Positions 9,585 through 63,740 of a stretch of 64,000 bases of DNA are shown in pieces. The first letter of the stretch is position 1. Each line of letters opens with the position of its first letter. Source of the stretch: Ascidiella aspersa (Eukaryota). The translations under genes were made by a program, and so were the position numbers. Below the pieces are notes generated by a model. The model was not told where the DNA came from. It did not search any database and saw only the letters and a list, made by a program, of their open reading frames with translations. The DNA lies in NCBI GenBank assembly GCA_963924565.1, contig OZ004612.1, positions 5,084,001-5,148,000 of the forward strand, written 5' to 3'.

Positions 9585-12500
9585 TTAATTTTTTTTTCCA
9601 ACGTTCGCATTCTCGTAGATCGCATCTGAAAAAAAAACAGAAACAAATCGTCAGCAATTTAGTTTATTTAATCCACTTTAATGAAGTCTTACCAGTTCCA
9701 GGCATGGAACCATCGTTCACATTTTCGTACGGGTTTTCCAAATCCTAAAATAATAAGATAAAGTTAAATGATTATTGTGTCCGTAGAACTAACATCGTTA
9801 TCAAAAGCTGAATTATGACCAGCTTTATATTCTATCCAGATATTACAAAAAAAACTTTGATTATACTGTAATGTTGACAGGCTGTCGCACAACCCTGCTT
9901 CATCAGGTCTAAGTAGAAATAAAAGCGTTCTTTTTGGAGGTACTTTAAAGCTGGTTACCTTTCCATGAGTTGGTCCACTGGAAGGGTTTACATCAACGTT
10001 TGCTGCTCCAGTACCTACAAAACAAATAATTTTTCGGCGAATACATTTGTAAGGTTTTAAGCCGTCTGCATGCAAAAGATTTAGTTTAAGTTACAACAAC
10101 CTAATTTAGCATGTACTTGTATAGGGCATGTCGCCATGTGGATATATCACACCTTTTAGACCGATTTTTTAAGTTAAAATAACTCATAATGTCAAGTATG
10201 TAAGCTGGGTTGAAGCATAATAGGAAGTATTGTAAATGACTTGACTAAAGTGCACAAATGACTTAGAGTTAAAATGAGCTGTTTTCATGAAGAATTTTTT
10301 TTATAAAATTGGGTTATGTCTTAATTATTGCATATAAAACAACTAGCTTGCTGTATGTTGCGCTTTTGTTGTATTTTAATTGAGTTATTTCTCATACTCT
10401 TTTAGCAAGTTTAGCGATTTAATAGATTAACGTTTTATGTTTATGACAAGGAGATGACTTGCTTCAAATATGACTTGACTCGGACTTGAGTTTGACTTGT
10501 CATTTACACAAACATAGTTTATTTAAACTTAATTTAGTTATTTTACAAATGACTTGACTGGGATTTAGGTCATTTTCAGTCATTTCACAATACTGCTATA
10601 GGTTATCTGTTTATCAACTAAATTGTAACGTACGTTATTACTATCAGGACACTTAGTTTTAAAAAGTAAAACTTACTTAAACAAAGCGGTTATTCGAATT
10701 AAATTTGAGTAATTTCGGCTTAAACTCTACCTAACTTAACATTTACTGCCACAACCATTAGAAGCTTTCGTCATTTAAATTTTAAAGTCCTTGTAAAATT
10801 GTGGCTTACTTTGTGAAGTGTAGGCAACAGTAGCAGGTTGTTTCGTTGTTATTTTCCTTCTGTAAGTAAAATAGAAAAATAATGACATTTCTTTGAATCT
10901 AGAGCCATTTGATGAGCCAACCCGCGCCCCCGTACCTGTCACGTGTTTTAGCGTTCCCTCTCAAATTCGCCCAGTTATAAGTAATTGTCAAAGTTTTTTT
11001 TTGTAAATATTAGACGTGCTATACAAGTAAAATAACATTTTAAGTGCCAATTTTGTGGAATAAAATTCTTTTTACAGTGAATCTAAAAAAATGAGCTATA
11101 CAAATAAAAAGTTGTGGGACTATTGTGTGGAATCGGCAAAGTGTCTGCAAATAAAATTTGATGAATGACGCTGTAACTTTAACTCTCTAGTCCATATGTG
11201 ATGCTTTACAGTCGGCAGCCGTATAAAATTTCTGTAATAATTTTCCCATTCATGTTAATAATTTCCCATTTATGTTAACTACCTTTTGAACACGACGGCG
11301 ACAACGATTAAAATGATCAGTAGAAGAAACAGCAGGCCGCCAACCACACCGCCAAATATAGCTGACGACACACCTGAAAGTAAAAACGTAAAACACGTGG
11401 AAATTGCAAGTAAAACTCTGTGTAAGTGACTAAACATAGCCTAAAACTTGGCTAGAAGGACGTAAGTAAAAAAAATGGTTTTAGCCAAAATTATTAGACA
11501 TCGGAATGCAATACGAAGTATAGGACATTCCACGCCGCAAGTATACCAAAAACAACAGAATTATCTAAAGATTACATACGGCAGCTGTCATAAATTTAGC
11601 GTCCCATGTCATAATATTTATTTGCCAACCGCTTGAAAATTTCAACGGAAAGCTTTCTTTAGATAACAGCCTACAGGTTGAATTTAAGCGAAAACAACGC
11701 ACGTGTTGACAAAAAAATAATTAATAGGAAATGCACTATAAGAGTTGCATACGTATGACAGCATTACAAACCAACAAAACAGCAGGTGTCATGCCTTACC
11801 GCCTGCGCCGGGTAATTCTGTTGTTGTCGTGGTCGATCGTGGAGTAATGCAGTGACCTTTAACAGGGGTTGGTTCACTTGCGCCTTCGCAAGTCTCCGCT
11901 TGGATCTAAACATTCAGTTGAACTTGTTGACAGAAGTACATAAATTCGTCCATTTTTATGTACTGCAATTATTAAATTCGAAGTGATCAGTATTGGAACA
12001 CATGGATCAAACGACGTTTTGTTAAGTAGTTCCCTACTATTTTCAACCAATATATTTGTGCTTGCTGTTCGTTAGATTATAACTTCGGGAACTCGTAAAC
12101 AAACCAAGTGGATTATATTTAACATAGCTGTGGATTTAATTACTACAGTAAATGTGTTTGGCAGACGTGGTCCGCATCCGGACCTTTGTAGTATAGAAAC
12201 GCATAAAGCATTTCCAATTTTTGAAATATGATAATAAAGTAAAAAAGCAAATTTTTAAGGTTTTTGGTACGATAACGAGAAACGTAAAGGGAAATCCCAT
12301 AAACCGACTTTAAGAAGAAAAAATTACTCGTATTTCAAGACATGTACGTTAACTAAAAGGTTGCAAGGCATGTAATTTGAATAGTCTAATGTGGTAAACC
12401 AAGGTTATCTGACAAAGTGTTTACCTTTGTTTCATGACGATTGCTAAAACTAGTTTAGAGTCCCTGGTTTAGACGTTTCACAGCAAATAAGAAAAATTAA

Positions 12501-15500
12501 AATTCAAAATTTGTATTATACCTTAGTACTTTTGTGTATCAGGTTGTTTTAGGTTGAAGTATAGCTACATTTTACAGAATTGAAAAAGGTCGTAGTTTGA
12601 TGGCCGTGGATGTTTTGCCAAGGACAAACAAATGGCGTTTACACTCACAAGCAACACTTACAGTCAGGTTTACATTCTGTACATTGCCATGCTTCTCTGG
12701 AGATAGTTGGACATTCAAGGTTTGGTTGTTTGCTTTGAATCTTTCTTGGGTTGTCGCATGTTGACTCGTTGCAGTAACCTACATTTAAACACAAAATACA
12801 GTTTAAGAGATCAAATGCGAATCATCTTCAAAGGTATTTAAAAAGAAAAATTGGCACAGTATATACTTTATACTGCAGTGAGGTTGAAACGTTTAACCCC
12901 GGCCATACCGGGACGGTCGTCTAGCAAATCAAAGCATGACTTGTGTAAGTTGATAATATTATCCACAGCACCGTTGTTTGCGTATGATGGTATGCACAGC
13001 ATGGTTAACAGCGAATTTTTTTACCAGTGCTGTAAACAAGTCATTTGCACTATAGCTTAACTTTAAGTCAAATCAATTTCAAAAATTATTCAGACACAGT
13101 ACGAATCCAACTAATTGCCACAGCAAGTCCGGTTCAAGTGAAGTATTAAAATTAGTAAATTTACCAAATCCCAAGCAATATTTTGCATAACAAACACCAA
13201 AAACGGAACAAAAGCGATCAATTTTTGTTACGGCTTAAACGAAAGGTAAATAACTCATTATAAATAAACGTTTCCAAAAATCGCTTCTATTTTTCACACA
13301 TGTGTATTGCTCTGATCAGGCCTACTTAAATTCGAACAACCACGTATAAACGTATATCGAAACATACACATGCTAGTGCAAATGTGATCTCGCCCTTCTG
13401 AAGTATTTTTTTGACCCACGATAATGGCCTATGTATTACCGAACACCGGAAGCCTTCGACAGATTAGCTGAACCAGTCGAACAAAGATGCAAGCAGACCA
13501 GGCTAGAAAAACAACTATAGCCTGCAGTGAGGTTTGAACTAGAAAACCGGGGCCATAACCTCATATAACATACAGGGGCTGTAACCTCAAATATATTCAA
13601 TAAAAGAAGCAACGACATATTGTCCTTTTTTCAATCTTCAGGTGTGGTATTATAACCTTTTATCGTAAGTTTATATAAATATTTAACGCGCGTGGCGTGT
13701 TGTTTTAAGGCCATTCAACTTTGCTTCGCCTCCACTGACCAGGTATGACTCGTTGTTACGTTGTGTGGGCGTGAAGATGACACAGGGAGTTGTTGAGTTC
13801 ACGAACGCTCCGATCACTCTTTCGGGTAATCCATATCCTGTTGTGACGTTGCTTGATGACTCGACTGTAAAGTTGCTGCAGCCAAGGAAAGAAGCCTTCA
13901 CCTAAAGTAACCAGTTGTTGTTTGCAAGTTAAGTGCACTATTGCCCAGTATTGTAACCAAGTTATTTTGAAATGACCCAAGTCCCAGTCAAGTCATTTAA
14001 AAACATAACAAGTCAAGTCTCCAATCTGGTCGTTTTACGTGCAACAATTGAGATAAATAACTCAATTTGACACAATGACTTAAGTCTAAGTCAAGTGAAG
14101 TCAATTGAAAAGAGTGAGGTACTTTTAAGTCAATTGAGTTATGTCGTTTTTAAAAGTCATTCATGTACGGATCTGTAAAGAAGCTTGATAATAAACCTTA
14201 AAATAAAAAAGATTGATCGTAGATAGACATAATCTTAATAAAGACTTCGATACGAAAACCTTTATAAGCGTTGTTTGGATATATTTCAGTCACTTTAACT
14301 GATGATATATGTTTAGATGCCGCTTTAAAAAAGAAGTTAAATTAGAGATGAATCACCTTGATGATATACTCAGATCTCCGTGTTAAACCAGGAATGACAG
14401 CCTTAAGCATTGCATACGAAGCTGCTTGTAATTTCGTTTTGTTGTCTTGCGTTGATTGCACCTCCACCTGCATAACGCATAACACAACACAATTGACCCG
14501 GATAGCATTTTATGTACAAACAATAAAAAAAAACAATAAAAAAAAGCTGATACTAAGAGTTTCAAAAACGAAAATAGTTCCAAAACGAAAAATATCCTTT
14601 AAATAAGGTTTAAAAATATATTTTTTGATAAAAACAAATTACGTCTTGGTTTTAATTTGTATACGGTACTAACAATATTACCACAAAAATCAGCAATAAC
14701 GTTTTCAAATTTATAGCGGTTTTTAAACAGTGTTTGGCAACGGGCACCAAAATATTAAAATAAGTTCGATGAACAATTAAAAGAGAAACAAATATTTAAA
14801 ATTAAGTCTTGTTTCAATTTGTGTACTACTAATATTAAAACACAAAACAGCAATAACGTTTTTAAACTTTCATAGCGGATTTTAAACAGTGTTCCGCACC
14901 GTGCCCCAAAATACTGCAATACCCATCGATGAACAACTAGAAAAGACGCAAATATTTAAAGGTTTTGTAAGACGAACAAAACGTGATTTAATTTACCTGC
15001 ATGTCAATTTTGTGTCCTGTTAACGAGAGCAGCTTGCTGAAATTATCCTGCCATTGTAGTTGGGCGAATGACGAATTGCTAGAGTCAACTGTAGCTGTCG
15101 TTTCCACTGTTAATGTAATAAAACCCATGTTAAATGATTTTAACGCCCGTTTTGTGCAATCTGGATAATTTACTACCTGTAGAGTGGGTCTTTTTAATGT
15201 TATAAAACGAAAACAAGTCAGAAATATCTCACTTTAATAAACGGGACAGTTTAATTCTTTGCTTGATTTTGACAGTAATTGTGTGCAAACTGGATAGCAT
15301 AATACCTTCATAAGGTAGAACTTTTTATGTTATAAAACAAAATCTAGTTACAGACTAACCCACTCCAATGAACCCAATCGGTTATTTAAACTTACCACAT
15401 TTGAGAGAAACAAGTTACAAAAATGAGCAACTCTATTGAAATGTTATTTATTGCAAAAACAAGCAGAACTTCCTTACGTTTATTTTGACACACATAATAT

Positions 15501-18500
15501 GCTTTTTCCCCGGTGCAATTTGCATTTGTAGCAATCCACCCATTCCCATAGTGTAAAACCTTTTGCTGGCAGGTTGAGGAATTTATGGGGTTAAAGTCTG
15601 CATTGGTCCCATCACCCCACAACCATTGCTGACTCGAAGGGTGCCATCTTGCCCCAATCGAAATCTTAACATCTGCGAACAACATCTTGGTGATAAGTTA
15701 ATTACGAAATAGGTATAGAATTACAACTGATTGTGTGAAAAACGACCATGCTCCATTCGTAGACATACCGCACTCGCGATTGTTTTTAACCTGCAGAATA
15801 TTTGCATTGAGTTTGCTTTTTTGTATGCGATGAAATTATTTATTAAGTAATAAATAAGCTAAAAATACTACATATTGCGGATAATTAGTTAGCTATTTTC
15901 CTTTTTTAGAGCACTGGAAAGCGAACTTTAAAATAACATTAAGAGCCACAACAAATTTTCGATTAAAGCAATTATAAAAATATCCTCTCGCAGAGATATT
16001 TTGTGAATTAGGAGTACAAAATATACCCTTTTAACGTTAACAGAAATTAAAAAAATCGAAATATGTGAACTGTATATATCCAGTGTTGTAATGACTTTTC
16101 TTTTTGCCTAAATGTCTGGACTTCTTAACTTGCTATTTGTTTCGTTTTTAATATTTGCAACGTAAAATATTGCTCAGAATAAAAAGTGTGTTGACAGATT
16201 TTTTAAGTTTAACTTTAAATTTTAATACCACTCAAGTGAATTGGATTTGACTTGTTATGGAAATGACTTAGACTGCGACTTGATTAGGGTAACTTATGAC
16301 TCACTGGGACTTAAGTCATTTCAAAAAAATATTTATTTACAGCACTGTATTTAATCATAAAGTAATGTAGTAATCGTGCTATAACGATATGTACCTGGGA
16401 CGAAAAATACTCCATGGTATTTAGTGTATTGACCATACGCCGCATTCGCATCTGTCAACCTTACAGAAGTGCCGCCCGAATTCTCATACGCATAGACAGG
16501 CTTGTATCCAGGTGTCGCGTCTTTGACAGCATACAGTTTGAAATTCTTAACCCATCCTGTAACAAAAGTTTAAAGTTAGACACAGCGTTTCTGTCTTCGT
16601 GAACCTACAAAATATCCAAACCTGTTGATACGCAACTTCCTTGTATTGCCACATACCAAAAGGTCCAACCGTATCTGCAGAAATGAATGGCTATTCTGTT
16701 TGGAGCCAACCTATAAAAGTCGTAGGACTGTTACTGAAGCCTTTAGCCATTTTATTGGCGATCCCACACAGACTTTTAGATAAATTTTAAATATTTAGTA
16801 GCCTACTTTTATTAAATATGATGTTGCTACCAGGCTTAGCATATACTGAAAAAAAGACTTGATATTTATTTGTTTACAGACGTTTCGGCTACCTATTATG
16901 CATGATTCTTTTTCATCGGGTACTGTAACAACACCACGCCAAAAAACAGGCAGAGTAAAACTACACAAATCCCTGATGAAAGCATACAGGATAGTTAGCC
17001 GAAGGTCGGGCTGGCATGCAGCTTTAAAGATAAAGTCATAAATTGACGTCTTTGTTTTTTTATAGAAACAAATGTAAAACTGAATTGGAGTCTAAATACA
17101 TTCAAAAAGGAGTCAGAGTGTGCCTTTGTTCAATCAAACTATTTTCTAAAATGAAATGCACTCCAGCTTTTTAATTATACACCAGATTTCAATAAGGCCT
17201 TCATAGACCCCCTAAAATCAGTCCACGGTTCCCAGTTTAAGAAACCCTGCAGTAAATAGACTGAATATTCAGCTTACGTGGTGAACAGATCAATGTATTG
17301 TAAATGACCAAGGCGACTTGTGCTTCTCCAAGATCCAACTTCTCCTTGCTGTTTCGAATATTTGTAGGAGTACGAGTTGTAGAAAATCCAGACCCTTGTC
17401 GTTTCTATACAAATGCCTTTATGTTTAGGAATTCAATGCAACACTACTTCGCGGCAGAATTATGCGCTTTGGTATGTTCTGGTGAATTACTCAATGGACG
17501 AGGTATTGCTCGCTAAACGGGTAATTGCAGCCCACAAAGCAGTAAAGTAGGTTTGTGTGAACCGGGTAATAAACCCATATAGGTTGCGGAATCTCTCACG
17601 TCGTATTATCCGAAATAGGTATATTTTGTTCTAAACAACCCGCTGCAGAGTTGGTTTGAAAATAACCGAAATGCGACTTCCGAGTCCAACTCCAGCCAAC
17701 TGCGTAATTTTGTCGAGTCCCGACTAAATGTGGTGTGTATTCAGCAATCAACTTATAGGCGTGTCATATAATACATTCACTCACCACACATGGATGAAAT
17801 ATATTCCACTATATGCAATTCCGCGTTTTATACAATTTACGGTTGGCGGCCATATCAGTTTCAAAATTTGGTACTGCGCATGGGTGTCGGACTTTTCAAA
17901 CACCTAAATTGGATCACCAGACATGTTTAACTCATATTATGGTCAACACTTTCTAAAAATATAACTTAAGCTGCACATAAAATAAAATAAAAAGTATTTT
18001 GCCTCATGTTTGTTTATCTGATTTTTTTTACACTTTTTTTATTTGACACTTTTCAAACCTTTTATATTTTAGGCCCACCCTACCGCGACTTACCACTTGC
18101 GTACTTCGCTTGAACTGCGTTGAGCAGCGAATCGTTTGTCCTTGCATCGCCAGCCGTAACCAGATTCCCTCCCAGCGACTTGCACTTGCTTTCAGCTGCA
18201 TTTGCGTCCAATAGATCGTCGGACAGTGTGAGAACGTTGCTTCCACTCACTGCTGTGCTTATTGGGCAACCTGGAAGCAGTAGACAACTGGTTAGGTTTG
18301 CTTAAAACAAGGATCGTTCAACTTTTTTGTAGCACAGACTCTTAAAAATATTTTGGATTGCGTGGAACAAGGTATGCATGAAATTTAGGGGATGACGTCA
18401 TGAATTGACGTCATCAAACAAATTCACCCAAGAAATCTGCTATAAGGGATTTAACTAATAAAATCAAGTAATAAAACTGAAAGAAATTCTAAATAAATTA

Positions 18501-21500
18501 GGAGTAGGCGCCAAAGCGTTTTTTTGTCTAATAAACTATGTTCTTTAAAACTTCAATCCATTTTTCAAATTACCAAGATCTCGATTAGACCTTAATAGAC
18601 CCTCTAAAACCAACCCACTTACCCCCAACGGGGTCAACATACCCCAGTTTAAGAACCCCTTGACTAAAGCAGGAGCACGTTTATTGCAGAGCTATTTAAT
18701 TGCAACAGATTAAAATTAATTTAGGGACGGAACTTAAAAACTGAAAAGACCATAACAACGTACTAGTGATGTTTGCTATCTAATAATAGTAATATATGAT
18801 TCACACTAATGACCCGTTCCGAAAGTAAAAACAAAACAAATTAACAGCTGGTATGAACATTTGTGCGATTTGATATTATCGTACGAAAGTAGGTTCAAGT
18901 AATTAAGTTATCAACCAGTAAAGTGCAGCGGACTTACCTTGAATTTGGCAATATCCAGTCACTATTCCGGTTCTACTGGTACAGGTACTTGTAAGGGCTT
19001 GGATCTACAAAAACGTTACAAATCGTTTGATTATAAACCGTTAATGTTTTCACTTGATGTTTTTTACCTTCAGGCTTATTTGATCGTTGTATCCGTGGTG
19101 TGATATAGGAACTTGCAAAGTTAGTTTGCTATTTGCTGATTCAGATTTCACGTCAAAATAATATGTGCTTGAATTTGAGTTGCTGGTGGAATCAACCTTT
19201 ATACAGAAAAAGTGACGGTTAAATGAAATTTCCCTTTGAAATACTGTATTCTAATCGTTGGACATGCAACTAACCTTGAACCACAATATTTTCTGGTTTG
19301 ACAGGTGGCTAGCGTCAGGATAGACTGCCACAATGCACTTTGCAGAATTCTCCACTCTAGCGTCGGGTGTTGGAGTTTTGAGTCCCGTTTTAGCAGCGAC
19401 TTGGGAACTTGTCACAAAAGTGCTGGAGCAGCCGGTAAAAGTGGCACGAACCTGAACGTTTGATAATAAACTGGTAAACACAATCAGATTTAATTTTATT
19501 CAAGTGTTAATCACTCTAGGGTGTAATATAACCTATCAGACTGGTTGGAAAATATTCAACTATATGCTATCATACCTTTGCGATTACAGTTTACAGCCTT
19601 ATAGCTTAAGCACATGCGCACGCCAAACTCGGGACTCAGGTAGTTTTGCGGATAGTCTTACTCGGGTCCCGAGCCCCACTCCAATAAAAAGAGTCAAGTA
19701 CCATGTCCCGAGTACGATTCCGACTCTTCAGCCCTGCCTTGCAGTGGTAGCTTGTGTAAGAAGCTCACTTTGTTAGTGAATACATCAGTGTTGTAATGAG
19801 TTAAGTCAATGACTCCACTTAAATGCACTAAGTCACTGTTTTTAAATGACTAGACTTGACTTAGGTATTTTGGGCAAAATGACTTGATTTAACTTGAGTC
19901 TTTTAGTTAAATGAGTTGACTTGACTTGGGTGAAAATGAAGTGTTCTTAAAAATCTGTTTGTTTTTTTATAAAATTGAGTTATTTATCCTAATTTTTGTA
20001 CACAAAAAAACGCTTGTTGTGTCCATGTTATGTATTGTGTCGAGTTATTGCTTATAATCGGACGAGTTCCTCATTAATAGTTTAACGTTTAATTCTTATG
20101 ACAATAAGGATTCGAAATTGACTGCTCTAATTATGATTTGACTGGGACTTTATTTGTTATTGATTCAAAAAGACTTGTTTACAACAAGTATGACAATATT
20201 GTTTGTGTTACACTGATGCTGTTCTAACAGCATTGTTTAGTGTGTATTAAATCATTCTATTAATTTGAATAGGAAATGAATCAGCATGGCTAAGCCAGTG
20301 AGCTGTTAGTAAGGTCCAGCACACTCATAAAGATTTCAGTTTCAAATTAAATCCACCAGTGTTTTCTCAAGTTCCAGTCAAGTAATTTGAAAAACAACTT
20401 AATTACAATTCTAAGTGGAGTCTTCAACCAACTTTAAACTATTATATTTGACCTATTTGAGCAATAACTTAACTAAAAATACCACCAAACGTAACATATT
20501 GCAAGCTAATTGTTTTATGCGCAAAATTTTATAAACCAATTTTATAAATAAATCTTAAATGAAAACACTTGAATTCAACCGAGGTCATTTGTCCAAAATA
20601 TTCAAGTCAAGTCAAGTCATTTGTCCAAAATATTCAAGTCAAGTCAAGTCATTTGTCCAATAGACCTAAGTCAAGTTAAATCATTTGTCCAGAATAACTA
20701 AGTCAATTTCACGTCAAATTATTTGAAATAGTGACAAGTGCACTTAAGTCGATTCATTAACTTAAGTCGGTACAACACTGAGTCTAGTAGCAAACTATCT
20801 TTCCGTAAGCCCCTCTAATGATTTACATTACTATTTTGCTCCCATACTGGAGCAGTTACTTTTCGCGATATATATTTTTACTTTGTACACATAAAGTGAC
20901 TTAAGTCAGGTACTAAATACCAAATATAAATGTAAGCCACTTACAGTGAAATTGAAGTCAGTGTTGGCTGCTAAGGCTGTTACTCTATAACTTCCAACTC
21001 CGTAGGCCAGAGTGCGGGAAATGGCGGTTGTTCCTTGCAAAACCTGAGACATAAAAGTACTTTTTGATATCTTAAGTGTCTATAAACCTTTGTTGCGCAA
21101 AATGGAAATTAATGCATGACATGCTGATTAAAATGCTAGAAGTCTTACCTGAGTTGTCAAAGAGCTGCCCTGTATGATGGCAATTTTTTGGAGGTTTTGA
21201 CTCCACAGAACATCGGCCACACTTGCATTGCATTGCTGTGTGGTTGTTGAGCTAGTCACTGGGAATATAACATTGAGAAGATAATTTTATATGCACACTT
21301 ACACGTAATTTACGTAATTTATATGCACACTTACACTTAATTTGGCAAGCGTAGTATATGTTTGTCCCTGTGCAGTCCACGTTGTCAGTCGTCCAGCCTC
21401 TGGAATACTTGTACGCCTTCTGCTGGCAACTTGTTCCTCCGGGGTTAAAGGAAGCTACTGAACCGTCGCTCCACAACCAAGTACTAGTTGTTGGGTTGTA

Positions 21501-24500
21501 ACGAGCTCCAATAAACACCCGAGATGTATCAATAACTGGACAAAATACCATAGTGTTCTAATAACTTAATGACTAAGCTTACTTTATTCTTTTTGGCATT
21601 TAAGTTAGGTAGTTGCAAAAAAATGGTTCGACTTGGGAACTATTAGGGCAAATGACATGACTTGTACTTATAAATCCACTTACTATTAAACAGAAAAATT
21701 TGTTGGGGTACACCCGAGCAAAACCAACTCATTATTTACATCATATTGTCCAGTTATTATCAGATGCATGGAAAAATTAAAATGTGACTTTTTAACATAA
21801 ATATTGGGAGATGCAACCCCAAAATATTCTTGGTTTATCCAATTAAATCGCAATTTTCTAACACTTAGTTCTGGTGAAAAATGCCTAAATAACAACCATC
21901 ATTGAAAGCAGACTTAATTTTCACAGTAATTTCGTCGTAAAATTACTTTGTATAGGCCAAGGTACAAAGTACCTACGGTCCATCAATATAAAGACTTGTT
22001 GTTTGATTTCGGAACTATAAATTATGGTGAATATGCTTTAGCGGTGAATGGCAAAAATTAAATCCGCCCTGTTTTAGTTTTGAAATGTATTGTATGTATT
22101 CAAAACTGCTAAATATCAAGGTAAAGCTGCTATCCTATTTCTTTTTTAACATTTTCGTTTTCTACAACGATTATATACCGGTCAGTGTGAGTGAAGAAAT
22201 TAGGGCGCCATCTTTAAAAATCTCATGCGATTCGGTTTGACATTTTCTCATCGTTTCGGAAAGAAAATTATTCTCATGTCAACCCTGATTTAGCCTGCTT
22301 TATTCGCTTCGCAATTACAGGAAGAAACACTTTTCGGGGCCTAGCTTTATTTGATACACACCTGCATAGATTATATATTCCTCTGCACTAAAACCGTTGT
22401 GGTAATCGTATCGGGTGGTTGTTAATCTGTTTCCCCAAGCTACGTCTTGAAGTCTTCTGTACTGATAGATGGTTTGATGTCCAGCTGCAGAACTTGAACC
22501 ATACAGGTCAAAATCGTAACCCCAGTCAATGTCTGTAAAGTTAAAAAACAGATTAACATTCACTTAATACTGAATAACACTTGAACGTAAAAAACGTGAA
22601 CGGTATACATATAAAATGAAAGATGGAGAAACATATTTGTGTTAACAACTGTGATCTAGCTCTTCTGAAGTTGTTAACACACATATGAGCAGCGAAAAGC
22701 CATTGCAGAATCATCAAATATGTCGATGAATAATGCAAGCAGGGCAGGCTAGAAAAACATGTAGCCTGTTGGAAGGTTCAAACTCACGACCTCCGGTCAA
22801 GCCGGGACCGTCGCTCTACCAACTGAGCCACACAGGCTCAGATAGGTGCGAGTAACATCTTGTTTGTACAGCAATAAGTTGTAGAACGGGATCCCCAGTT
22901 AAATCAACTTGAACCGTATCACATATGTATATTTGTAACTGGACCAATCACATCTCGCTATCCAATGGTAAAATGACTAGGCAACAACAGCGGTGACTTG
23001 TGTGGTTACAGCAGGCGATACAACTAAAAACCCGCGTATATCATAGTAGGTAGGACGACGACGCCAATATGGCCACGGCCGTGAGTTCGAATCTCACAAA
23101 TTCCTTTCTTGCAATCAAATCCTTATCGACCAACTTATTTCAGCTGGCCCAACGAGGCAACAAAACGTATCAAGTAACAACCGATTTCATTAATGGTTTC
23201 GTACCATTAACGTTCTGTTTTTGTTATTTGTTTGAATGTTGCTCAGTATTATTTGCGCTTGCATTTGAATCTGCGACTAAAACAATCACAGTAATTCAGG
23301 TAAAAAATATCGAAGAATATGTCGAAATTACCGACATGGAGAAGAAAAAATGCGAAGTATACGACTAGTGTAAATTTCATCACATATTAAAAGTATATCT
23401 AAGTTACATTTTTATCTCACTTTTTTTTTAAAATAAAACTTTTAATGGTGCTTCGCATTTACGCTTACACAAAGACCTGTCAAAATGTTAAAAAATGTTT
23501 TTTTTTTAAAAAAAAGGTAAAAAGATCATTTAACACAGACAGCAGATATGCAAAAACTGATCAAAATTGAATAAATTAAATCTTACATGTGTAATCGCAA
23601 GTTTTCTTTCTGATTTGCCATCTGTACTCATGATGTCGACAGAAGTATAGACGAGTTCTTCCAGTTGCCCACCTGAATGCATTAACACGTTGATTAACTT
23701 AACACAGTGAAAAAGAGTTTTACGCCCATTTCACAACGCACAGTTAGGCTAAGGTGTTTCGTAGCCTCCGGCTCATTTGGATTTAGCTTAATTTTGCATC
23801 CGTATACTTTAAGGAGATTAATACATACTGTATAGTATTGCAGGCCTTATTTTCTGATTTTGGACAGAAATAAAATTGCATCCTTTCAGAATTCCATCTT
23901 ATTAAGGTTATAAGAACTGAATAAGAATTAAAAAGATAGAACAACGTAATTTTGTACCTTCCGATTCATTTGAATTTTGCTTTTTTGTGTCAGCAAAGGC
24001 GCCTCATGCAATACAGCTTGTTTCGCGAGGCATTTCGTCCTAAAATTCGGTAAATTCTGACAATATCATGCCTGACAGTTTCTGACTGGAACGTTAGTTT
24101 AAGCTATGTTCAACGTGCATCCTATCAAACACACAACGTAATTTTTTGGCAGTGTTAGACTAGATTGCAGTGTTAGACTACTGCACCTAACATTAACTTA
24201 TCGTCGACCCGCGTTTAGCCTTGCACACAACTTTATAACGCTATGCGTTTCCCCAGTAGGCTCTATTAGGATTTCCTGTTTTAAATTTCGCCGTCGTCTT
24301 GGGTTTCAATGCACGCGTGGAGCGATAAACGACTGATAACATTAGTTCAAAGTCGCATGCTTGTTCTGTAAAACAGGATAAAAAAAATAAACTATGACGG
24401 CATACTCAATCGTATAATGATAAGACGAATTTGCGATAAAAAGCAGATAAAATGGAGAGGTCTCTATTTGCTATCTGTTGGTTTCATCTATTAAGGAGGT

Positions 24501-27500
24501 ATGGGATGGACGTTTCATCGCAAGATACATCGCCACAACTATAGAAATGCCCGATATTTACATTGATCGAGAAAATGTCTGATACTCTGAACAAAAATTA
24601 CCGCGATTCGCTCCGATACCAAATGACGTCATTACTATTCTCCACCGACGAACATTTTTTCTTTGGTGCATTTATTCGCAAAAATGCAGTTTACTAGCCA
24701 ACTCAATACTATGGGTATTAAGTTGGCTATTGGACTACATTTTTAAAACCAGTGCTTCTTCACCTTTTTTTGCGACCCACTTTTATTGCAAGTTTTATTG
24801 CGCGACCCACAATTATGACCAAACGAATGAAAAGCATATTAGTGAGAAAAGACGCAATATAATACGGATGCCAATTAGTATTAATGCGAAACTTGATTTT
24901 GCTTATGGGATATTATCAGATCAAGACGTATTTGTTACATTGCTACAAAAATGTTAGTTAATAATAATGCAATAATTTTCCGATCTAATAGAAAACTGTA
25001 ACATTTAGGAATGCTTCGCGAGCATCTGGTTGGGAAGCACTGTTTTAAACAATGGGCAACTAGATTTGGGAGTGATAATTAATTAATAAGGTTAAATTCC
25101 TAACATGTTGTATTAGTATTTTTTACGTGCTGACGAAACGTATGAAGGGTCAAATCCGTTCACCTCTGAATATACAGCTGCTTAACAGATTACACTCGTT
25201 CAATGTTCCTCTTGTAAAAAAACTTTGTTTGACGCCGATTATCGCTGATTATTTTCACACCTATTTCCGCCTTTACAGTAGAGCCTATATAATATGGTTT
25301 TCAATCACGTTTCTTGACACATGAGCTTACGTGCAGAAAGAACCCAAGTTGACGCGGTGAATGAAGAATCGTGAAGCGCGTCATCACCAGCTGACGTTTA
25401 CCAGATGACGTCATGAAGTGATGACGTAGGTCGCGAGAGAACTTCCCGCAACCCAAGTAATCATAAACTAACCAAGCGTGGACCGAGTTTCGCCAAAAAA
25501 TGAGGCCAAAGTCGGATTTAACTTTCACCGAAGTCGCCCTAACTTCTTTAACCTGGACAATCGATAAGACTATCTTTTTGCTTATGACGTGTACAAAGCA
25601 ACGATGTCAGGTCACAATGTCATCGATCGTTTTCCGGACATTTCAGTTTTTAGCAGGGAACACCTTGTAAATTTTCCGCGTTTCATTTACGGTTTGACCC
25701 GTCATTCGGATTTCAAATAAGTATACTTTCCCCTGGTTTGCAAACTATGTACTTATTTACATGCGACTAACGTCGACAGGAAAAACTAATTTCCCGGAGA
25801 ACAATTTCAAAAAGTATAGCAGGGAGAAAGGCAATTCGTCTCGTGTGACACAGATGACAAAATTTGCTGAGCACGTGAAACTCATTGTTTGGCCTTGGTT
25901 CTGCGTCTGCATATTTCCAAATCCGTTGAGTTTGTTTGAACGCAAAGACAGTGACTGGGTAGTATTCTACCATTTAAATACTTTTGCAAATATGTAACAT
26001 GACGTGCTCCTTTCTATAAAAGCTGAATTCTTCACAGCAGTGTTTTTCAAATTATATTAATTTCCGGGAGAACCATTTCGTAGAATGACAAATATTAGCT
26101 TTAATTACGCTGAAGATTTTGTATTTAAAGAAACCGTTTTTACCATATTTAAAAGCATTTTTTTGAATTTTTTTGAACAACGACTTTTTCAAATGTTTTG
26201 TATTGCACTGTACGATTTAGGCTTGATTCAATCACTCAAATACTTAAAGTTACTTGCTGCAAATTTAAACTAGCAAGGCATTTTTTTGTCATACTCACGT
26301 TGTATAGAGATCAATGTACCACACACTTTCCCCAGTAACGCCCTTCGTTGATTTCCAAGGCCCAGTTTCGTTGGGGCTTTTCGAAAACTTGTAAACTTTA
26401 TCGTTGGTCGGTTGGTAAAAGACATACACCCTTTGGATGCCTGTGGATAAATAACAGCAAAAAAGTGAACGAAGCAATACTCCAACCACTTGTCCGTTAT
26501 ATTGCAATACATGCGAAGTTAGGTGCCAGCTATACAGGTAACTCTATGGGGATTATACAACGATTCTGGATACACTTTTATTTTGGAGTCAATAAACCCC
26601 TTCAAAGTCTGTAAACAGGTTTGAGGTATCCTCTGGTTTATTGAAAACTAAAAGAATTTGCTTATACTTAAGGCAACTGTTTAAGAGTTAACGCATTTTT
26701 AATTTAATTCGACTACAGTGTTTTAGTTCAATTTGACTTGTTTTTAGTAAATTTAAGCTCATTCTTTAAAAAATGAAGTGTGCGTAAGCTTAATGAATCT
26801 TTCGGGTCTCTGATTAAAAATACAATAGGCGGGGCGAATAAATACTAGAAATTGTTAAAATGGGCTGCGTACAACTACTAGACAGGATGTGGGTTGCCAA
26901 ATCCTGATTAAAATCAATCTCTGTTATTTTTCTATGCTCACTTCACCGGTCGACAATGTGGTGTTGCAAATATACGCCCCACGCCCCATGTAGGTGCTGT
27001 GCTTAGCAAGTCAACACACCTGCTCTGTATTTGCTGTCAAGAGCTGTTGTAAGGCTAGTTTTTATCTGGGTATCTTTAGCTGAGGCGAGATGTCCTCCCA
27101 GCTTGACACATTCCCCCTCAGCTGTGTCCGCATCGACTTGGTCATTTGATAAAGTCAGAACACTGTCCTTGACGCCAAAAGTCGTCAGCTCACAAGCTAA
27201 GAAAACAAACGCCGTAGGACTAGTCAAAAATGCAAAAAAACAGCTGATGTTGTTCCATAAAAATAACAGTTTACAATTATGCAACCTTTTAACAATGAAA
27301 AGTTTTTCGACCAGTAAGGTGAACCAAACCCATTGACTAATTTTACTGAAAATAATAAATGCAAAATAACACCGTATATAATCAAATCTTCGTTACTACA
27401 AGAATAAACAATCAGTTATTTGACTGAGTTTAAGGAATTTTCTGTTTTTTTTAGATCAAATAAATTTGTTAATATACCCGAATCTTGGATCAATACATTA

Positions 27501-29858: not shown

Positions 29859-29911
29859 CGAGTACAAGAAGATGCCCAACGATCAGCTCATAAACAACCA
29901 CATCGCCGACC

Positions 29912-50600: not shown

Positions 50601-53600
50601 TTTCACAAGGTTAAAAATTATTTAAAAAATGCACGTGTAAGTTGATAATAATATCCACAGCACCGTTGTTTGCGTATGATGGTGTGCACAGCATGGTTAA
50701 CAGCGAATTTTTTTACCAGTGCTGTAAACAAGTCATTTGCACTATAGCTTAACTTCAAGTCAAATCAATTTCAAAAATTATTCAGACAATGCGAATTCCT
50801 ATGTATTACCGAACACCGGAAGCTTTCGACAGATTAACTGAACCAGTCGAACAAAGATGCAAGCAGAGCAGGCTAGAAAAACAACTATAGCCTGCAGTGA
50901 GGTTTGAACTAGAAAACCGGGGCCATAACCTTATATAACATACAGGGGCCGTAACCTCAAATATATTCAATAAAAGAAGCAAAGACATATTGTCCTTTTT
51001 TCAATCTTCAGGTGTGGTATTATAACCTTTTATCGTAAGTTTATATAAATATTTAACGCGCGTGGCGTGTTGTTTTAAGGCCATTCAACTTTGTTTCCCG
51101 ACCACTGACCAGGTATGACTCGTTGTTACGTTGTGTGGGCGCGAAGATAACACAGGGAGTTGTTGAGTTCACGAACGCTCCGATCACTCTTTCGGGTAAT
51201 CCATATCCTGTTGTGACGTTGCTTGATGACTCGACTGTAAAGTTGCTGCAGCCAAGGAAAGAAGCCTTCACCTAAAGTAACCAAGTGTTTGGAAGTTAAG
51301 TACACTATTGCCCAGTGTTGTAAACAAGTTATTTTGAAATGACCTAAGTCCCAGTCAAGTCATTTGTAAACTAACTTACGTCCAAGTCAAGTCGTTTGTA
51401 AACTAACTTAAGTCCAAGTCAAGTCGTTTAAAAACATAAAGTCAAGTCTCCAATCTGGTCGTTTTACTTGCAACAATTGAGATAAATAACTCAATTTTAT
51501 GAGAAAAAATTGACTAAAAACACTTTATTTCAACCCAATTGCTTTGACACAATGACTTAAGTCTAAGTCACGTCCTTTTACCAAAACGACTTGAGTGAAG
51601 TCAATTGAAAAGAGTGAGGTACTTTTAAGTCAATTGAGTTATGTCGTTTTTAAAAGTCATTCATGCACGGATCTGTAAAGAAGCTTGATAATAAACCTTA
51701 AAAAAAAAAAGATTGATCGTAGATTGAAATAATCTTAATAAAGACTTCGATACGAAAACCTTTATAAGCGTTGTTTGGATATATTTCAGTCACTTTAACT
51801 GATGATATTGATTAGATGCCGCTGTAAAAAAGGAGTTAAATTAGAAATGAATCACCTTGATGATATACTCCGATCTCGGTGTTAAACCGGGAATGTCAGC
51901 CTTAAGCATTGCGTACGAAGCTGTTTGTAATATCGTTTTGTTGTCTTGTGTTGATTGCACCTCCACCTGCATAACGCAGAACACAAACACAATTGACCCG
52001 GATTGTATTTTATGTAAAAAAACAATAAAAGTGGTGGCACTAAGAGCCTCCAAAGCGAATGAAAATACCACATTATTCCACGGGCTCTAAAAGTATAATT
52101 ACGTCTTGTTACAATTTGTGTGCTAACATAATTTGTATACAAAACAGCAAAAGCGTTTTACATTTATAGCGATTTTCAAACAATGTTCGCCCCCGTGCGC
52201 CAAAATACTGAAATAACCGTCGACAAACAATTTAAAAAAATGAATATATTTAAAGGTTTTGTAATGATATAAAGACGAAAAAAGTAATGCATATTACCTG
52301 CATGTCAATTTTGTGTCCTGTTAACGAGAGGTGCTTGCTGAAATTATCCTGCCATTGTAGTTGGGCGAATGACGAATCACAAGAGTCCACGGAAGCTGTC
52401 GTTTCCACTGTTAATGTAATACGCAAAGCTATATGTTGTCAAATACATGTTAAATAATTTTGACACTGGTTTTGTGCAATCTGGATAATTTACTAACTGT
52501 ACAGTAGGGCTTTTTATTGTTATAAAACCGAAAAAGGTTACAGAAATATCTCACTCTAATAGACGGAACAGTTTATTTATACATTCTTGATTTTGACAGT
52601 AATTTTGTGCAAATTCGATAATTTAATACCTGCATATGGTATAATGTTTTAAAACGGAAACAATTCGCAGTAATAGCCCACTCTAATGAACGGGAACCGG
52701 CTCATTAAACTTACCTAATTTTGACGGTATGAAGTTACAAAAATGATAAAACTCTTTTTTAAACTTGTTTTATTGCAAAAACAAGCAGAACTTCCTTACG
52801 TTTATTTTGACACACATAATATGCTTTTTCGCCGATGCAATATGCGTTTGTAGTAATCCACCCATTCCCATAGTGTAAAATCTTTTGCTGGCAGGTTGAG
52901 GAATTTATGGGGTTAAAGTCTGCAACAGTTCCATCTCCCCACAACCATTGCTGACTCGAAGGATGCCATCTTGCCCCAATCGAAACCTTAAAGTCTGCGA
53001 ACAACATCTTGGTGTTAAGTTAATTACGAAATAGGAATAGAATTACAGTTAATTCTGAGGAAAATAAGCAAGCTCCATTCGTAGACATACCGCACTCGCC
53101 TGTTTCATTTTGCCGATTATTTACATTGAGTGTGTTTTTGTGTGCAACAAAAATATTTATTAACTAATATAGAAGCTAAAAATAACACATTATGCAGTCA
53201 ATAATTTTTCTTTTTCAAGAACAATGAAAAACAACTTATAAATAACAGTAAGAGACAATTTAGAATTTTTTCAAAAAATCAACTATAAAAATATCGTTTT
53301 CTTTTTCCAGAAATACTTTGTGAATTAAGAGTAGGCTACAACATATACCTAGTTAAAACGTTAGCAAAATCTAAAAATTCAAGTATGTGAACCGTATATA
53401 ACCAGTGTTGTATTGACTTTATTTTTGCCTAAAAAACTGGGCGTGACTTAAAAAACTTAACTCCCTATTAGTTTCGTTTTTAATGTTTGCAACGTAAAAT
53501 ATTCCTCAGCATTGAAAGTGTGTTGACAGATTTTTTTAAGTTTAACTTTTAATTTTAATACCATTCAAGTGAATTGGATTTGAATTGTTATGCAAATGAC

Positions 53601-62600: not shown

Positions 62601-63740
62601 CCACCAATGGGCAACTAGATGTAGGAGTGATAATTAATTAATAAGGTTAAATTCCTAAATTGTTGTATTGGTATTTTTTACGTGCTGACGAAACGTATGA
62701 AGGGTGAAATACGTTCACCTCTGAATGTACAGCTACTCAACAGATTACACTCGTTTAATGCTACTCTATAAAATGACTTTATTTTGCTGCTACATCTATT
62801 TCCGCTTGTACAGACCTTGGTTTTCAGTCACGTATTTGACACATGAGCTTCCGTGCAGACAGAACGCGAGTGAACGCGGAAAAAGAAGAATCAATCGTGA
62901 AGCGCGTCATCACCAGCTGACGTTTACCGGATGACGTCATGATGTGATGACGTAGGTCACGAGAGAACTTCACGCAACCCAAGTACCGGTAATCATAAAA
63001 TAACCAAGCGTGGACCGAGTTTCGCCGAAAATGAGGCCTAAGTCTAATTTAAGTATTACCGAAGTCGCCCTACCTTCTTCAACCTGGACAATCGATAAGA
63101 CAATCTATTCAGTTTTGTTTTTTTATGACGTCTACAAAGCGGCAATGTCACGTCACAATGTCATCGATCGTATCCTGACATTTCAGATTTAAGCAAGAAA
63201 CACCTTACAAACTTTTAATGTTTTATTTACAATGTAACCCGTGCTACGGATTTCAAATAAGTATACTGTCACCTGGTTTGCAAATAATTAGAATTTATTA
63301 ATTTACTTGCGACTGGCGTAGACAGAAAAAACAATTTTTTGCAAAAAAAACGTAACATGATATATATTGGGCTGACTTTAATTTAGACTGGGGATTTGTA
63401 TACTAAAAGAAACCGTTTTTACCATATTTAAAAGCATTTTTTTAATTGTTTCCTTTTAAACACCTTCAAATTGTTTCGCAAACACACGACTTTTTAAATG
63501 TTTTATATTGCACTGTACGATTTAGGCTTGATTCAACCATTCAAATGCGTAAAGTTACTTGCTGCAAATTCAAACTAGAAAGGCAATTTTTTTCTCACGT
63601 TGTATAGAGATCAATGTACCACACACTTTCCCCAGTAACGCCCTTCGTTGATTTCCAAAGCCCAGTTTCGGCGGGTCTTTTCGAAAACTTGTAAACTTTA
63701 GTGTTGGTCGGTTTGTAAAATACATACACCCTTTGAATGT
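47626..63740 (-). CDS. Paralog (or allele) of the split-lectin/FN3 receptor lacking the TM exon; predicted secreted form; 5' exons lie beyond the window end
   Basis: Exons 63599-63740, 61389-61474, 60157-60327, 59130-59330, 58944-59053, 58740-58838, 57101-57277, 56894-57022, 56764-56830, 55934-56110, 54752-54878, 53951-54039, 53724-53885, 52800-52994, 52298-52407, 51856-51966, 51110-51271, 50104-50220, 49394-49499 are all open with intact splice sites. No TM exon between 48873 and 49394. Splicing to 48873 gives ...PDAS-EGK* (TAA 48863-48865). Tail exons remain down to 47626 but fall out of frame. Confidence 0.78.
53403..53676. mobile_element. MITE of the abundant 'GACTTGAC/AAGTCA' family (representative copy)
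   Basis: TIRs CAGTGTTGTA ... TACAACACTG with internal gacttgac repeats. Many intronic copies: ~1865-2270, 4797-4975, ~5440-5617, ~10205-10594, ~13945-14160, 16081-16347, 19786-~20187, 20357-20780, ~31322-31680 and counterparts in copy 2. Confidence 0.8.
55003..55283. mobile_element. Copy-2-specific foldback/MITE-like insertion built from AAAATGTGCG / CGCACATTTT repeats
   Basis: Absent at the matching copy-1 site (~17512). Flanked by a 9-bp direct repeat GCTTAACGG (54994-55002, 55284-55292). Internally inverted, with a central (CTAACT) microsatellite. A related partial copy at ~34506-34630 shares the CAACAGGGAC end. Confidence 0.75.
60530..60635 (-). mobile_element. tRNA-derived SINE (duplicate of 22735-22840)
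   Basis: Near-identical to the copy-1 element. Confidence 0.72.

What the first reader, a model, noticed from the sequence alone, without database searches (positions are those of the whole stretch)
15478..27196. C-type lectin-like domains split in two by an inserted three-repeat domain (occurs twice)
Seen: each CTLD is encoded by an N-half exon (27020-27196 / 18094-18270: C..VLTLS.D..DA..AE..C..LGG.L) and a C-half exon (21335-21535 / 15478-15672: IGAR[YW]..WLW.DG..C..GW..C..Y.CQ). Between them sit three in-frame exons (phases 1-2, 2-1, 1-1) encoding ~125-135 aa. Known: in a canonical CTLD, helix alpha2 is followed almost directly by the WIG strand, so this is an insertion at that junction. 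EPN/QPD and WND Ca2+ motifs are absent. The insert looks like three ~45-aa aromatic-rich repeats: RVWIFYN..YKYSK..W..IDLFT / PNRIAIHFCRY..W..C..W..FKLY / PGYKPVYAYEN..RLT..Y.GVFFVP. To my eye this resembles DUF5648-type or other three-fold beta domains. Inference: the CTLD acts as a scaffold displaying a separate ligand-binding module, brought in as a phase-1 flanked cassette. I do not recognise this architecture from described lectin families.
Basis: partly seen in the sequence, partly recalled or inferred. Interest (0 to 1): 0.92.

Follow-up and report, generated by a model that had tools for sequence, protein, structure and literature searches.

The report
Lectin fold split by nested domain
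A sea-squirt membrane-receptor gene encodes two C-type-lectin-like domains, each interrupted by a three-exon cassette for an extra ~130-residue beta-rich module; this odd build recurs in at least 150 copies on one chromosome, but no transcript or full-length fold has been checked yet.

Summary
On the minus strand all ten listed exons have AG/GT borders and phases 1-1, 1-2, 2-1, 1-1, 1-1. The joined frame is open for 508 codons. The same order (N-half, E1, E2, E3, C-half) is found in every unit sampled from clusters on the same chromosome, where at least 150 intact E1 exons lie. It is also found in a eukaryotic contig of another species.

The two halves look like one compact C-type lectin-like domain (CTLD) without Ca2+/sugar motifs. 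Per-exon Pfam and PDB profile hits are weak, but nearly all are to CTLDs and the two halves match complementary parts. A two-chain co-fold test gave weak support.

The insert has no significant Pfam, PDB or profile match. AlphaFold2 on single exons gives confident three-stranded blades: beta1-beta2-alpha-beta3 for E1 and beta1-beta2-loop-beta3 for E3. That is the blade type described for bacterial DUF5648, a three-bladed glycan-binding domain. A language-model search of E3 returned only DUF5648 clusters. HMM evidence is weak for E1 and absent for E2 and E3, so DUF5648 is a resemblance, not membership.

New here: some paralogues carry two or three cassettes in one CTLD, and skipping the cassette also keeps frame.

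No RNA data could be reached, and the spliced protein was never folded. The scan's first-stage reader also noted this build about 24 Mb away (s1-801672).

The parts
27020..27196 (-). Unit 1, N-half exon of the CTLD (strand beta1, helices alpha1-alpha2; phase 1-1)
   Evidence: In-frame translation. AG/GT borders. Paralogue alignment A2. Its profile hits CTLD chains in the PDB.
26299..26440 (-). Unit 1, insert exon E1a = blade 1 (phase 1-2)
   Evidence: AG/GT borders. Member of E1 alignment A4.
23587..23672 (-). Unit 1, insert exon E2a = first two strands of blade 2, with two conserved cysteines (phase 2-1)
   Evidence: AG/GT borders. The signature hxhx[FY]C...W...C is shared by 22 distinct E2 exons.
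22362..22532 (-). Unit 1, insert exon E3a = last strand of blade 2 plus blade 3 (phase 1-1)
   Evidence: AG/GT borders. Member of alignments A1 and A6.
21335..21535 (-). Unit 1, C-half exon of the CTLD (beta2 'FIGAR' through beta5 'YYACQ'; phase 1-1)
   Evidence: Pfam Lectin_C positions 40-105, E=0.021. Profile A3 hits CTLD chains such as CD94, KLRG1 and CLEC9A. Co-fold with N1.
18094..18270 (-). Unit 2, N-half exon of the CTLD (phase 1-1)
   Evidence: Pfam Lectin_C positions 6-36, E=0.076. AG/GT borders.
17278..17404 (-). Unit 2, insert exon E1b = blade 1 (phase 1-2)
   Evidence: AG/GT borders. AlphaFold2 on this exon with 27 paralogues: pLDDT 88.3, strands 4-11 and 16-19, helix 31-34, strand 39-43.
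16622..16710 (-). Unit 2, insert exon E2b (phase 2-1)
   Evidence: AG/GT borders. Conserved E2 signature.
16395..16556 (-). Unit 2, insert exon E3b (phase 1-1)
   Evidence: AG/GT borders. AlphaFold2: pLDDT 90.3, strands 18-25, 32-35 and 46-54. 108 six-frame matches in the own genome. ESM Atlas returned DUF5648 clusters.
15478..15672 (-). Unit 2, C-half exon of the CTLD (phase 1-1)
   Evidence: In-frame translation. AG/GT borders. Member of alignment A3.
11288..11350 (-). Candidate transmembrane segment of the same gene, downstream of unit 2 (21 hydrophobic residues followed by KR)
   Evidence: Kyte-Doolittle mean of 3.22 over 21 residues, the highest on this strand between 9 and 28.5 kb. It lies in a stretch that has no counterpart in the second gene copy.
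52801..56108 (-). Second gene copy, unit 2. Match ranges: C 52801-52992, E3 53683-53898, E2 53940-54050, E1 54751-54906, N 55935-56108.
   Evidence: tblastn map. The exons are 83-97% identical in protein to copy A.
59131..63732 (-). Second gene copy, unit 1. Match ranges: C 59131-59328, E3 60113-60358, E2 61396-61473, E1 63598-63732. Its N-half lies beyond the window's end, at about base 290-463 of L021.
   Evidence: tblastn map.

Best explanation
The region is part of a type I membrane-receptor gene on the minus strand. Its ectodomain holds two composite units. Each unit is a compact C-type lectin-like domain (CTLD) that keeps both canonical disulfides but lacks the Ca2+/sugar motifs. Its chain leaves the fold at the alpha2/beta2 junction, forms a separate module of about 130 residues, and returns. 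The module is built of three small blades, each a three-stranded antiparallel sheet. It is encoded by a three-exon cassette with phase-1 borders that sits in the intron between the two CTLD half-exons.

Shown:
- the exon structure and phases;
- conservation of the nested order in at least 150 copies on one chromosome and in another species;
- the CTLD character of the halves;
- the blade topology of two of the three insert exons.

Inferred:
- the cassette is included in the mature mRNA, because it could not stay intact in so many copies otherwise;
- the module folds independently with its two ends close together;
- it is the variable ligand-binding (probably glycan-binding) part, while the CTLD is a conserved scaffold;
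- binding is passed on through the membrane anchor and the cytoplasmic tail.

In size, three-fold build and blade topology the module resembles bacterial DUF5648 glycan-binding domains. Homology to them is not established.
For: Gene structure:
- All ten exons have AG/GT borders with consistent phases, and the joined frame is open for 508 codons.
- Splice sites are conserved across about 25 paralogous units.
- The order N-E1-E2-E3-C holds in nearly every unit of 23 fetched loci; two divergent unit types lacked a detectable E3 or N.
- The same order is present in eukaryotic metagenome contigs L024-L027. Their C-half is at most 54% identical to anything in this genome, so they come from another species.
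- At least 150 E1 exons without stops are found, all on contig C6.

CTLD identity:
- The Pfam Lectin_C matches of the N-half and C-half cover complementary parts of the model, 6-36 and 40-105.
- PDB profile hits are almost all CTLDs.
- The cysteines and the WIGL and WxWxDG motifs are conserved.
- Co-fold of N1 with C1: ipSAE 0.53 against a best control of 0.01, verdict 'weak support'. The mark was reached by 51 of 78 solved complexes and 2 of 108 mismatched pairs. At 0.60 or under, only 5 of those 78 solved complexes reached it, as did all 4 mismatches that passed. The runs agree in at least 96% of contacts and the partner's pLDDT is at least 73. Each half reaches pLDDT of about 74-75 only when the other half is present, against 35-44 with an unrelated partner.

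Insert:
- AlphaFold2 on E1 gives pLDDT 88 with topology beta1-beta2-alpha-beta3.
- AlphaFold2 on E3 gives pLDDT 90 with topology beta1-beta2-loop-beta3.
- E2 carries a conserved beta1-loop-beta2 signature with two cysteines.
- DUF5648 is described as a (beta1-beta2-alpha-beta3)x3 three-bladed glycan-binding domain of about 130 residues (PMC11299179; bioRxiv 10.1101/2025.01.06.631476).
- ESM Atlas with E3: all 30 named hits are DUF5648 clusters, score 0.90, 188 of 256 features shared.
- The E1 family beats column-shuffled controls against a DUF5648 single-repeat HMM; only 2-6 of 300 shuffles reach the observed scores.
- hhalign places E1 at the start of DUF5648 repeat 1 and E3 at the repeat 2/3 junction, which is colinear.

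Variable part:
- Among the four tandem gene copies, dN/dS is 0.56-0.88 for the insert and 0.14-0.52 for the CTLD halves.

Membrane anchor:
- A candidate transmembrane segment lies at 11288-11350.
Against: - No transcript evidence.
- Skipping the cassette also keeps the frame and would give a plain CTLD.
- That the CTLD closes around the insert, and that the three blades pack into one domain, are therefore inferences from fragments.
- The co-fold verdict is only 'weak support'.
- The per-exon Pfam scores for Lectin_C (16.0 and 14.2 bits) are under the 22.6-bit cut-off.
- The insert has no Pfam match and no PDB sequence match.
- E1 against E3 is not significant.
- hhalign against DUF5648 gave P = 0.05 and 0.12.
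- E2 and E3 do not beat shuffled controls.
- ESM Atlas gave no usable hit for E1.
- The dN/dS values rest on few substitutions.
- Ligand binding is untested.
Confidence: 0.62

Rival explanations
1. The cassette is an optional or alternative module. The main product would be an ordinary contiguous compact CTLD (N-half spliced to C-half). The three-exon cassettes would be included only in some isoforms. In genes with two or three cassettes they would be used one at a time to diversify the receptor.
For: The N-half donor and C-half acceptor are both phase 1, and skipping both cassettes leaves 249 open codons. Every cassette is symmetric 1-1. Some paralogues hold 2 cassettes (L013, L019, L010) or 3 (L012) between one N-half and one C-half, each with its own E2. 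N1 and C1 co-fold without the insert.
Against: The cassette is intact in at least 150 copies and in another species, so it must be translated often enough to be kept by selection. No unit without a cassette was seen among the sampled family members. No RNA data exist either way.
Confidence: 0.2
2. The insert is a true homologue of bacterial DUF5648, a glycan-binding three-bladed domain. It would have entered a CTLD intron in an ascidian ancestor, possibly by gene transfer from bacteria, and then diverged beyond the reach of HMMs. This reading refines the best explanation rather than replacing it.
For: ESM Atlas with E3 returned only DUF5648 clusters. Length is similar: 126-133 aa against a 134-position model. 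The same beta1-beta2-alpha-beta3 blade is seen in the E1 model, as described in PMC11299179. E1 beats shuffled controls against a DUF5648 repeat HMM. The hhalign placements are colinear. The strand motifs are alike: 'RVWIFYN' and 'KPVYAYEN' against 'PVYRFYN'.
Against: The Pfam DUF5648 model finds nothing in the exons or in the six-frame genome. The invariant RFYN...HFYT...E residues of DUF5648 are not kept. E2 and E3 give no HMM signal. The Atlas gave no hit for E1 and its own notes say a score of 0.90 is only a lead. Small three-stranded blades could arise by convergence.
Confidence: 0.3
3. The N and C pieces are not halves of one domain. The unit would be a new composite fold in which CTLD-like motifs are only remnants, or the exons would belong to different products.
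For: Each half alone scores below Pfam's cut-off. The PDB profile E-values are weak, 0.00066 to 1. The co-fold verdict is only weak support.
Against: The two halves match complementary, adjoining parts of the CTLD model. All four canonical cysteines and the WIGL and WxWxDG motifs are in place. The co-fold score is 0.53 against at most 0.01 for the controls, with a mutual gain in pLDDT. Order, phases and spacing are fixed across the family.
Confidence: 0.06
4. The array consists of decaying or non-expressed gene copies, so the architecture has no present function.
For: An earlier follow-up on the neighbouring copy saw no expression (s1-790885). Some paralogous exons carry stops.
Against: All 150 scored E1 exons are free of stops. 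Splice sites are conserved. dN/dS is below 1 for the CTLD halves. The build is conserved in another species.
Confidence: 0.04

Closest known systems
Compact C-type lectin-like domains of animal receptors without Ca2+ sites (for example the NK-receptor type CD94/KLRD1, KLRG1, CLEC9A)
   Same: The halves match these chains in the PDB profile searches. They share the alpha1 'AE..C..LGG.L' motif, a WIGL-like strand, WxWxDG and the C1-C4 and C2-C3 cysteines. They lack EPN/QPD and WND. The protein is a membrane receptor with a tail.
   Different: Here the chain is interrupted between alpha2 and beta2 by 126-133 residues encoded on three extra exons. The receptor is type I with two such units. An invariant 'CQQK' replaces the usual loop motifs. 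I know of no described CTLD with a whole domain nested at this junction, and found none in the paper searches.
DUF5648 (Pfam PF18885), the bacterial (beta3-alpha)x3 three-bladed domain of GH70 enzymes, BSAP toxins and an endolysin
   Same: About 130 residues, three blades of beta1-beta2-alpha-beta3, rich in aromatic residues, and thought to bind glycans. The E1 and E3 models have the same blade topology. The language-model neighbours of E3 are all DUF5648.
   Different: There is no Pfam match. The invariant RFYN/HFYT/E residues are missing. The helices are short or replaced by loops, blade 2 carries a conserved cysteine pair, the host is an animal, and the domain is nested inside another domain and split over three exons.
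Nested-domain lectins noted elsewhere in this genome by the scan (an intelectin with a 238-aa nested domain, s1-787248)
   Same: The same genome, a lectin fold interrupted by a cassette flanked by phase-1 introns, and an insert said to resemble bacterial surface-protein domains.
   Different: The host fold is different (intelectin against CTLD) and so is the insert. I did not test that note.

Membership tests
C-type lectin-like domain (CTLD fold, Pfam PF00059 Lectin_C) | Match to the Lectin_C model above the curated cut-off of 22.6 bits | tested here: not met
Exon by exon only: C1 scored 16.0 bits (positions 40-105) and N2 scored 14.2 bits (positions 6-36). The two matches are complementary.
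C-type lectin-like domain (CTLD fold, Pfam PF00059 Lectin_C) | Four conserved cysteines (C1 in alpha1, C2, C3, C4 in beta5) and the WIGL and WxWxDG core motifs | tested here: met
   Invariant C29 in the N-half. Nearly invariant C36 and invariant C54 and C63 in the C-half. Also G9, A10, W19, W21, D23 and G24.
C-type lectin-like domain (CTLD fold, Pfam PF00059 Lectin_C) | The two halves pack into one domain | tested here: inconclusive
   Two-chain prediction: score 0.53 against a best control of 0.01, verdict 'weak support'. The runs agree in at least 96% of contacts and the partner's pLDDT is at least 73. No coordinates were returned for a fold search.
Ca2+-dependent carbohydrate-recognition domain (true C-type lectin) | EPN or QPD motif plus WND in the long-loop region | tested here: not met
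   Absent from all 24 aligned C-halves. An invariant 'QK' after C2 and 'GW.T.N' stand in their place.
DUF5648 (PF18885) | Match to the Pfam model (cut-off 25 bits) | tested here: not met
   No hit for any insert exon at E up to 10 and none in the six-frame genome. Bacterial controls scored 121-131 bits.
DUF5648 (PF18885) | Invariant repeat residues R-F-Y-N ... H-F-Y-T ... E in each of the three repeats | tested here: not met
   These are invariant in 12 bacterial domains. The insert keeps only partial forms: 'V.I[FY]YN' in E1 and 'P.Y..[YF]' in E3. hhalign gave P = 0.05 and 0.12.
DUF5648 (PF18885) | Three blades, each beta1-beta2-alpha-beta3, in about 130 residues | tested here: inconclusive
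   The E1 model is beta1-beta2-alpha-beta3. The E3 model is beta1-beta2-loop-beta3, preceded by an unpaired segment that would be blade 2's last strand. E2 has a two-strand signature. How the three blades pack was not modelled.

The most novel reading that the evidence does not exclude
A chordate recognition-receptor family uses the CTLD as a fixed frame into which one to three copies of a bacterial-type (DUF5648-like) glycan-binding module are spliced. Cassette number, choice and fast evolution of the module would provide receptor diversity across more than 150 gene units. This would be a previously undescribed way to build variable lectin receptors.
Probability: 0.2. Interest if true: 0.85.

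Novelty: new variant of a known kind. Interest (0 to 1): 0.62.

Why it matters
CTLDs are among the best-studied animal recognition domains. As far as I know, and as far as the paper searches reached, a whole domain nested at the alpha2/beta2 junction has not been described.

If transcripts confirm inclusion, this family shows three things:
- the CTLD tolerates a large insertion at a conserved intron position;
- a big, fast-evolving receptor repertoire in a close invertebrate relative of vertebrates is built this way;
- a three-bladed module like bacterial glycan binders may have been recruited by an animal.

It also gives a ready test case for domain insertion by exon shuffling, and possibly for cassette-based receptor diversification.

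Tried and rejected
There is no RNA evidence.
One such frame, 135 aa around an E1 exon, lies at C6:27.93 Mb.
- The spliced (joined) protein was never sent to any search or fold tool. Only single exons by reference were used. In scripts the exons were joined only to count stops and substitutions.
- Representative search with an E3 profile found only four exon-sized fragments from metagenomes. The seven long hits were repeat proteins (five carry FG-GAP repeats) and are spurious summed matches.
- The listing of cluster members gave no names.
- The search for homologous proteins with the C-half region found no candidates.
- PDB sequence searches with the E1 and E3 profiles found nothing meaningful.
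- Foldseek with the single-exon models against PDB and BFVD found nothing below E = 0.4, as expected for fragments of 45-55 residues.
- E1 against E3 by hhalign gave no support for repeat homology.
- The DUF5648 repeat HMM against E3 and E2 scored no better than shuffles.
- ESM Atlas with E1 gave no usable hit.
- The complex-prediction result is 'weak support', not a pass.
- I looked for paralogues whose introns read through in frame, to fold a contiguous piece. Only L012 5859-6257 (E2 + intron + E3) qualified, and I did not use it.

Full report
**What is there**

The window is G000:C6:5084001-5148000 of a 308-Mb genome. An earlier follow-up calls the organism a sea squirt.

The N-halves read 'C...VLTLS.D..DA..AE..C..LGG.L...KY' and the C-halves read '..IGAR...WLW.DG....C.QK....GW......C.....YY.CQ'.

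I placed every border on the sequence and checked them by script:
- Unit 1: N1 27020-27196, E1a 26299-26440, E2a 23587-23672, E3a 22362-22532, C1 21335-21535.
- Unit 2: N2 18094-18270, E1b 17278-17404, E2b 16622-16710, E3b 16395-16556, C2 15478-15672.

All ten exons have an AG acceptor and a GT donor. The phases are 1-1, 1-2, 2-1, 1-1, 1-1. The inserts are 399 and 378 nt. The ten exons joined read open for 508 codons. Leaving both cassettes out also reads open, for 249 codons. The exons were joined in a script only to count stops.

The spliced protein itself was not sent to any search or fold tool. All searches below are exon by exon, by reference.

**It is a family, not a curiosity**

The window holds a tandem duplication of about 37 kb: 1733-26701 matches 37760-64000 at 81-97% identity. 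The gene is therefore present twice, with more copies on both sides.

Exon E3b has 108 six-frame matches in the genome. An E1 profile has 150 scored matches out of 195 candidates, none with a stop. All lie on contig C6, in clusters near 5.0-5.2, 7.2-7.3, 8.0-8.1, 27.9-28.0, 29.0-29.6, 30.0-30.2 and 31.3-32.6 Mb.

I fetched 23 stretches from these clusters. Nearly every unit has the order N-half, E1, E2, E3, C-half on one strand; the exceptions are a divergent unit type in L010, L013 and L016 where tblastn found no E3, and two irregular units in L014. Acceptors, donors and phases sit at the same codon positions across about 25 units.

Some units hold two complete cassettes (L013, L019, L010) or three (L012) between a single N-half and a single C-half. 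Each cassette has its own E2 and borders of phase 1-1.

Outside this genome, an E3 profile searched against 1.8 billion representative proteins found only four exon-sized fragments from metagenome assemblies. One of them led to four near-identical eukaryotic contigs, L024-L027. These show N, E1, E3 and C in the same order over 6.5 kb. Their C-half is at most 54% identical to anything in the window's genome. The build therefore exists in at least one other species.

**Are the halves one CTLD?**

Each half alone is weak:
- C1 matches Pfam Lectin_C positions 40-105 (E=0.021).
- N2 matches positions 6-36 (E=0.076). Both are under the cut-off.

The two matches are complementary and meet at the alpha2/beta2 junction. 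Profiles of 21 N-halves and 24 C-halves hit almost only CTLD chains in the PDB. The N profile's best E is 0.00066. The C profile's E-values are about 0.2, to ovocleidin-17, CD94, KLRG1 and CLEC9A, over the expected parts of those chains.

The C1 cysteine of helix alpha1, the C2, C3 and C4 cysteines, a WIGL-like 'FIGAR' and 'WxWxDG' are conserved. EPN/QPD and WND are absent. 'CQQK' is nearly invariant.

I gave N1 and C1 as two chains to the complex predictor:
- The score was 0.53 against a best control of 0.01, with the verdict 'weak support'.
- The tool states that the mark was reached by 51 of 78 solved complexes and 2 of 108 mismatches.
- At 0.60 or under it was reached by only 5 of those 78 solved complexes, and by all 4 mismatches that passed.
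- The runs agree in at least 96% of contacts, and the partner's pLDDT is at least 73.
- Each half has pLDDT of about 74-75 with the other half and 35-44 with an unrelated partner.

Because CTLDs are well known to the model, this shows likeness to a CTLD, and that likeness was the point in question. I take the CTLD reading as likely (about 0.8) but not proven.

**What is the insert?**

No insert exon matches Pfam or a PDB sequence. E1 against E3 is not significant by profile comparison.

AlphaFold2 on single exons with paralogue alignments gave confident models:
- E3: pLDDT 90.3, strands 18-25, 32-35 and 46-54.
- E1: pLDDT 88.3, strands 4-11 and 16-19, helix 31-34, strand 39-43.

Each of these two exons therefore holds one three-stranded blade. 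E2 has a conserved 'hxhx[FY]C ... [KR]W.V ... C' signature in 22 distinct copies. This fits the first two strands of a middle blade. The third strand of that blade ('GW..F.LY') would open E3.

For it:
- The ESM Atlas feature search with E3 returned DUF5648 clusters for all 30 named hits (score 0.90, 188 of 256 features). This is a lead by the tool's own standards.
- Two papers describe DUF5648 as a three-bladed, glycan-binding (beta1-beta2-alpha-beta3)x3 domain of about 130 residues. It occurs in GH70 enzymes and in Bacteroidales toxins that target O-antigen.
- I fetched real bacterial DUF5648 domains by a DNA motif and confirmed them with Pfam at E=4e-38. Against their alignment, hhalign puts E1 at the start of repeat 1 and E3 at the repeat 2/3 junction. 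This is colinear but weak, with P = 0.12 and 0.05.
- A single-repeat HMM scores the E1 family above column-shuffled controls; 2-6 of 300 shuffles reach the observed scores.

Against it:
- The Pfam model finds nothing in the exons or the genome.
- The invariant RFYN/HFYT/E residues of DUF5648 are not kept.
- E3 and E2 do not beat shuffles.
- The Atlas gave nothing for E1.

My reading is that the insert works like a small three-bladed beta module of the DUF5648 type. Membership is not shown, and I put it at about 0.3.

**How it most likely works**

A strong transmembrane candidate lies downstream at 11288-11350. The gene would then encode a type I receptor with two composite units outside the cell.

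Among the four local gene copies, dN/dS is 0.56-0.88 for the insert and 0.14-0.52 for the CTLD halves, on small counts. This fits a conserved frame carrying a faster-changing binding module.

That the module binds ligand, probably glycan, is inference from the DUF5648 analogy and from its variability.

Inclusion of the cassette in mRNA is also inferred. It follows from its intactness in at least 150 copies and in another species. The cassette-skipped form is equally in frame, and multi-cassette genes exist, so alternative use is a live rival.

**Limits**

- The whole unit was not folded or searched.
- No paper on a CTLD with a nested domain was found in the held library. That library is not exhaustive.
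- The first-stage reader noted the same build at about 29.1 Mb of this contig (s1-801672). A follow-up reported a nested domain in an intelectin of this genome (s1-787248).

**Verdict**

This is a new variant of a known kind: a discontinuous CTLD with a nested three-bladed module, greatly amplified. Interest is moderate to high, pending transcripts and a full-length fold.

Noticed in passing
window 1733-26701 vs 37760-64000: Tandem segmental duplication of about 37 kb with mosaic identity. It is 97% over 18075-23796 but about 82% over 14797-16889 and 17057-17477. This suggests gene conversion between the two receptor copies.
   Followed up: partly
L012:1786-8258 (C6:29,206,786-29,213,258); also L013:3385-5786, L019:3410-8198, L010:1895-5935: Paralogues with three (L012) or two complete E1-E2-E3 cassettes between a single N-half and a single C-half. 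All cassettes are open and have phase 1-1 borders. Whether they are included in tandem or used one at a time is unknown.
   Followed up: partly
G000 contig C6, clusters near 5.0-5.2, 7.2-7.3, 8.0-8.1, 27.9-28.0, 29.0-29.6, 30.0-30.2 and 31.3-32.6 Mb: All 150 scored E1 exons of the family lie on one contig of 33 Mb, and none was found on the other 74 contigs.
   Followed up: no
   Followed up: partly
L013:7614-8891, L016:4158-5512, L010:7495-7997: A divergent unit type with an N-half, E1 and a short C-half match, but no E3 detectable by tblastn. It may be a shortened or strongly diverged insert.
   Followed up: no
window about 29580-29865: A run of 284 N (gap or masked) lies upstream of the gene.
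   Followed up: no
C6:27,928,049-27,928,192 (-): An E1 exon sits inside a 135-aa open frame. This could be a paralogue that has lost introns, or an in-frame intron.
   Followed up: no
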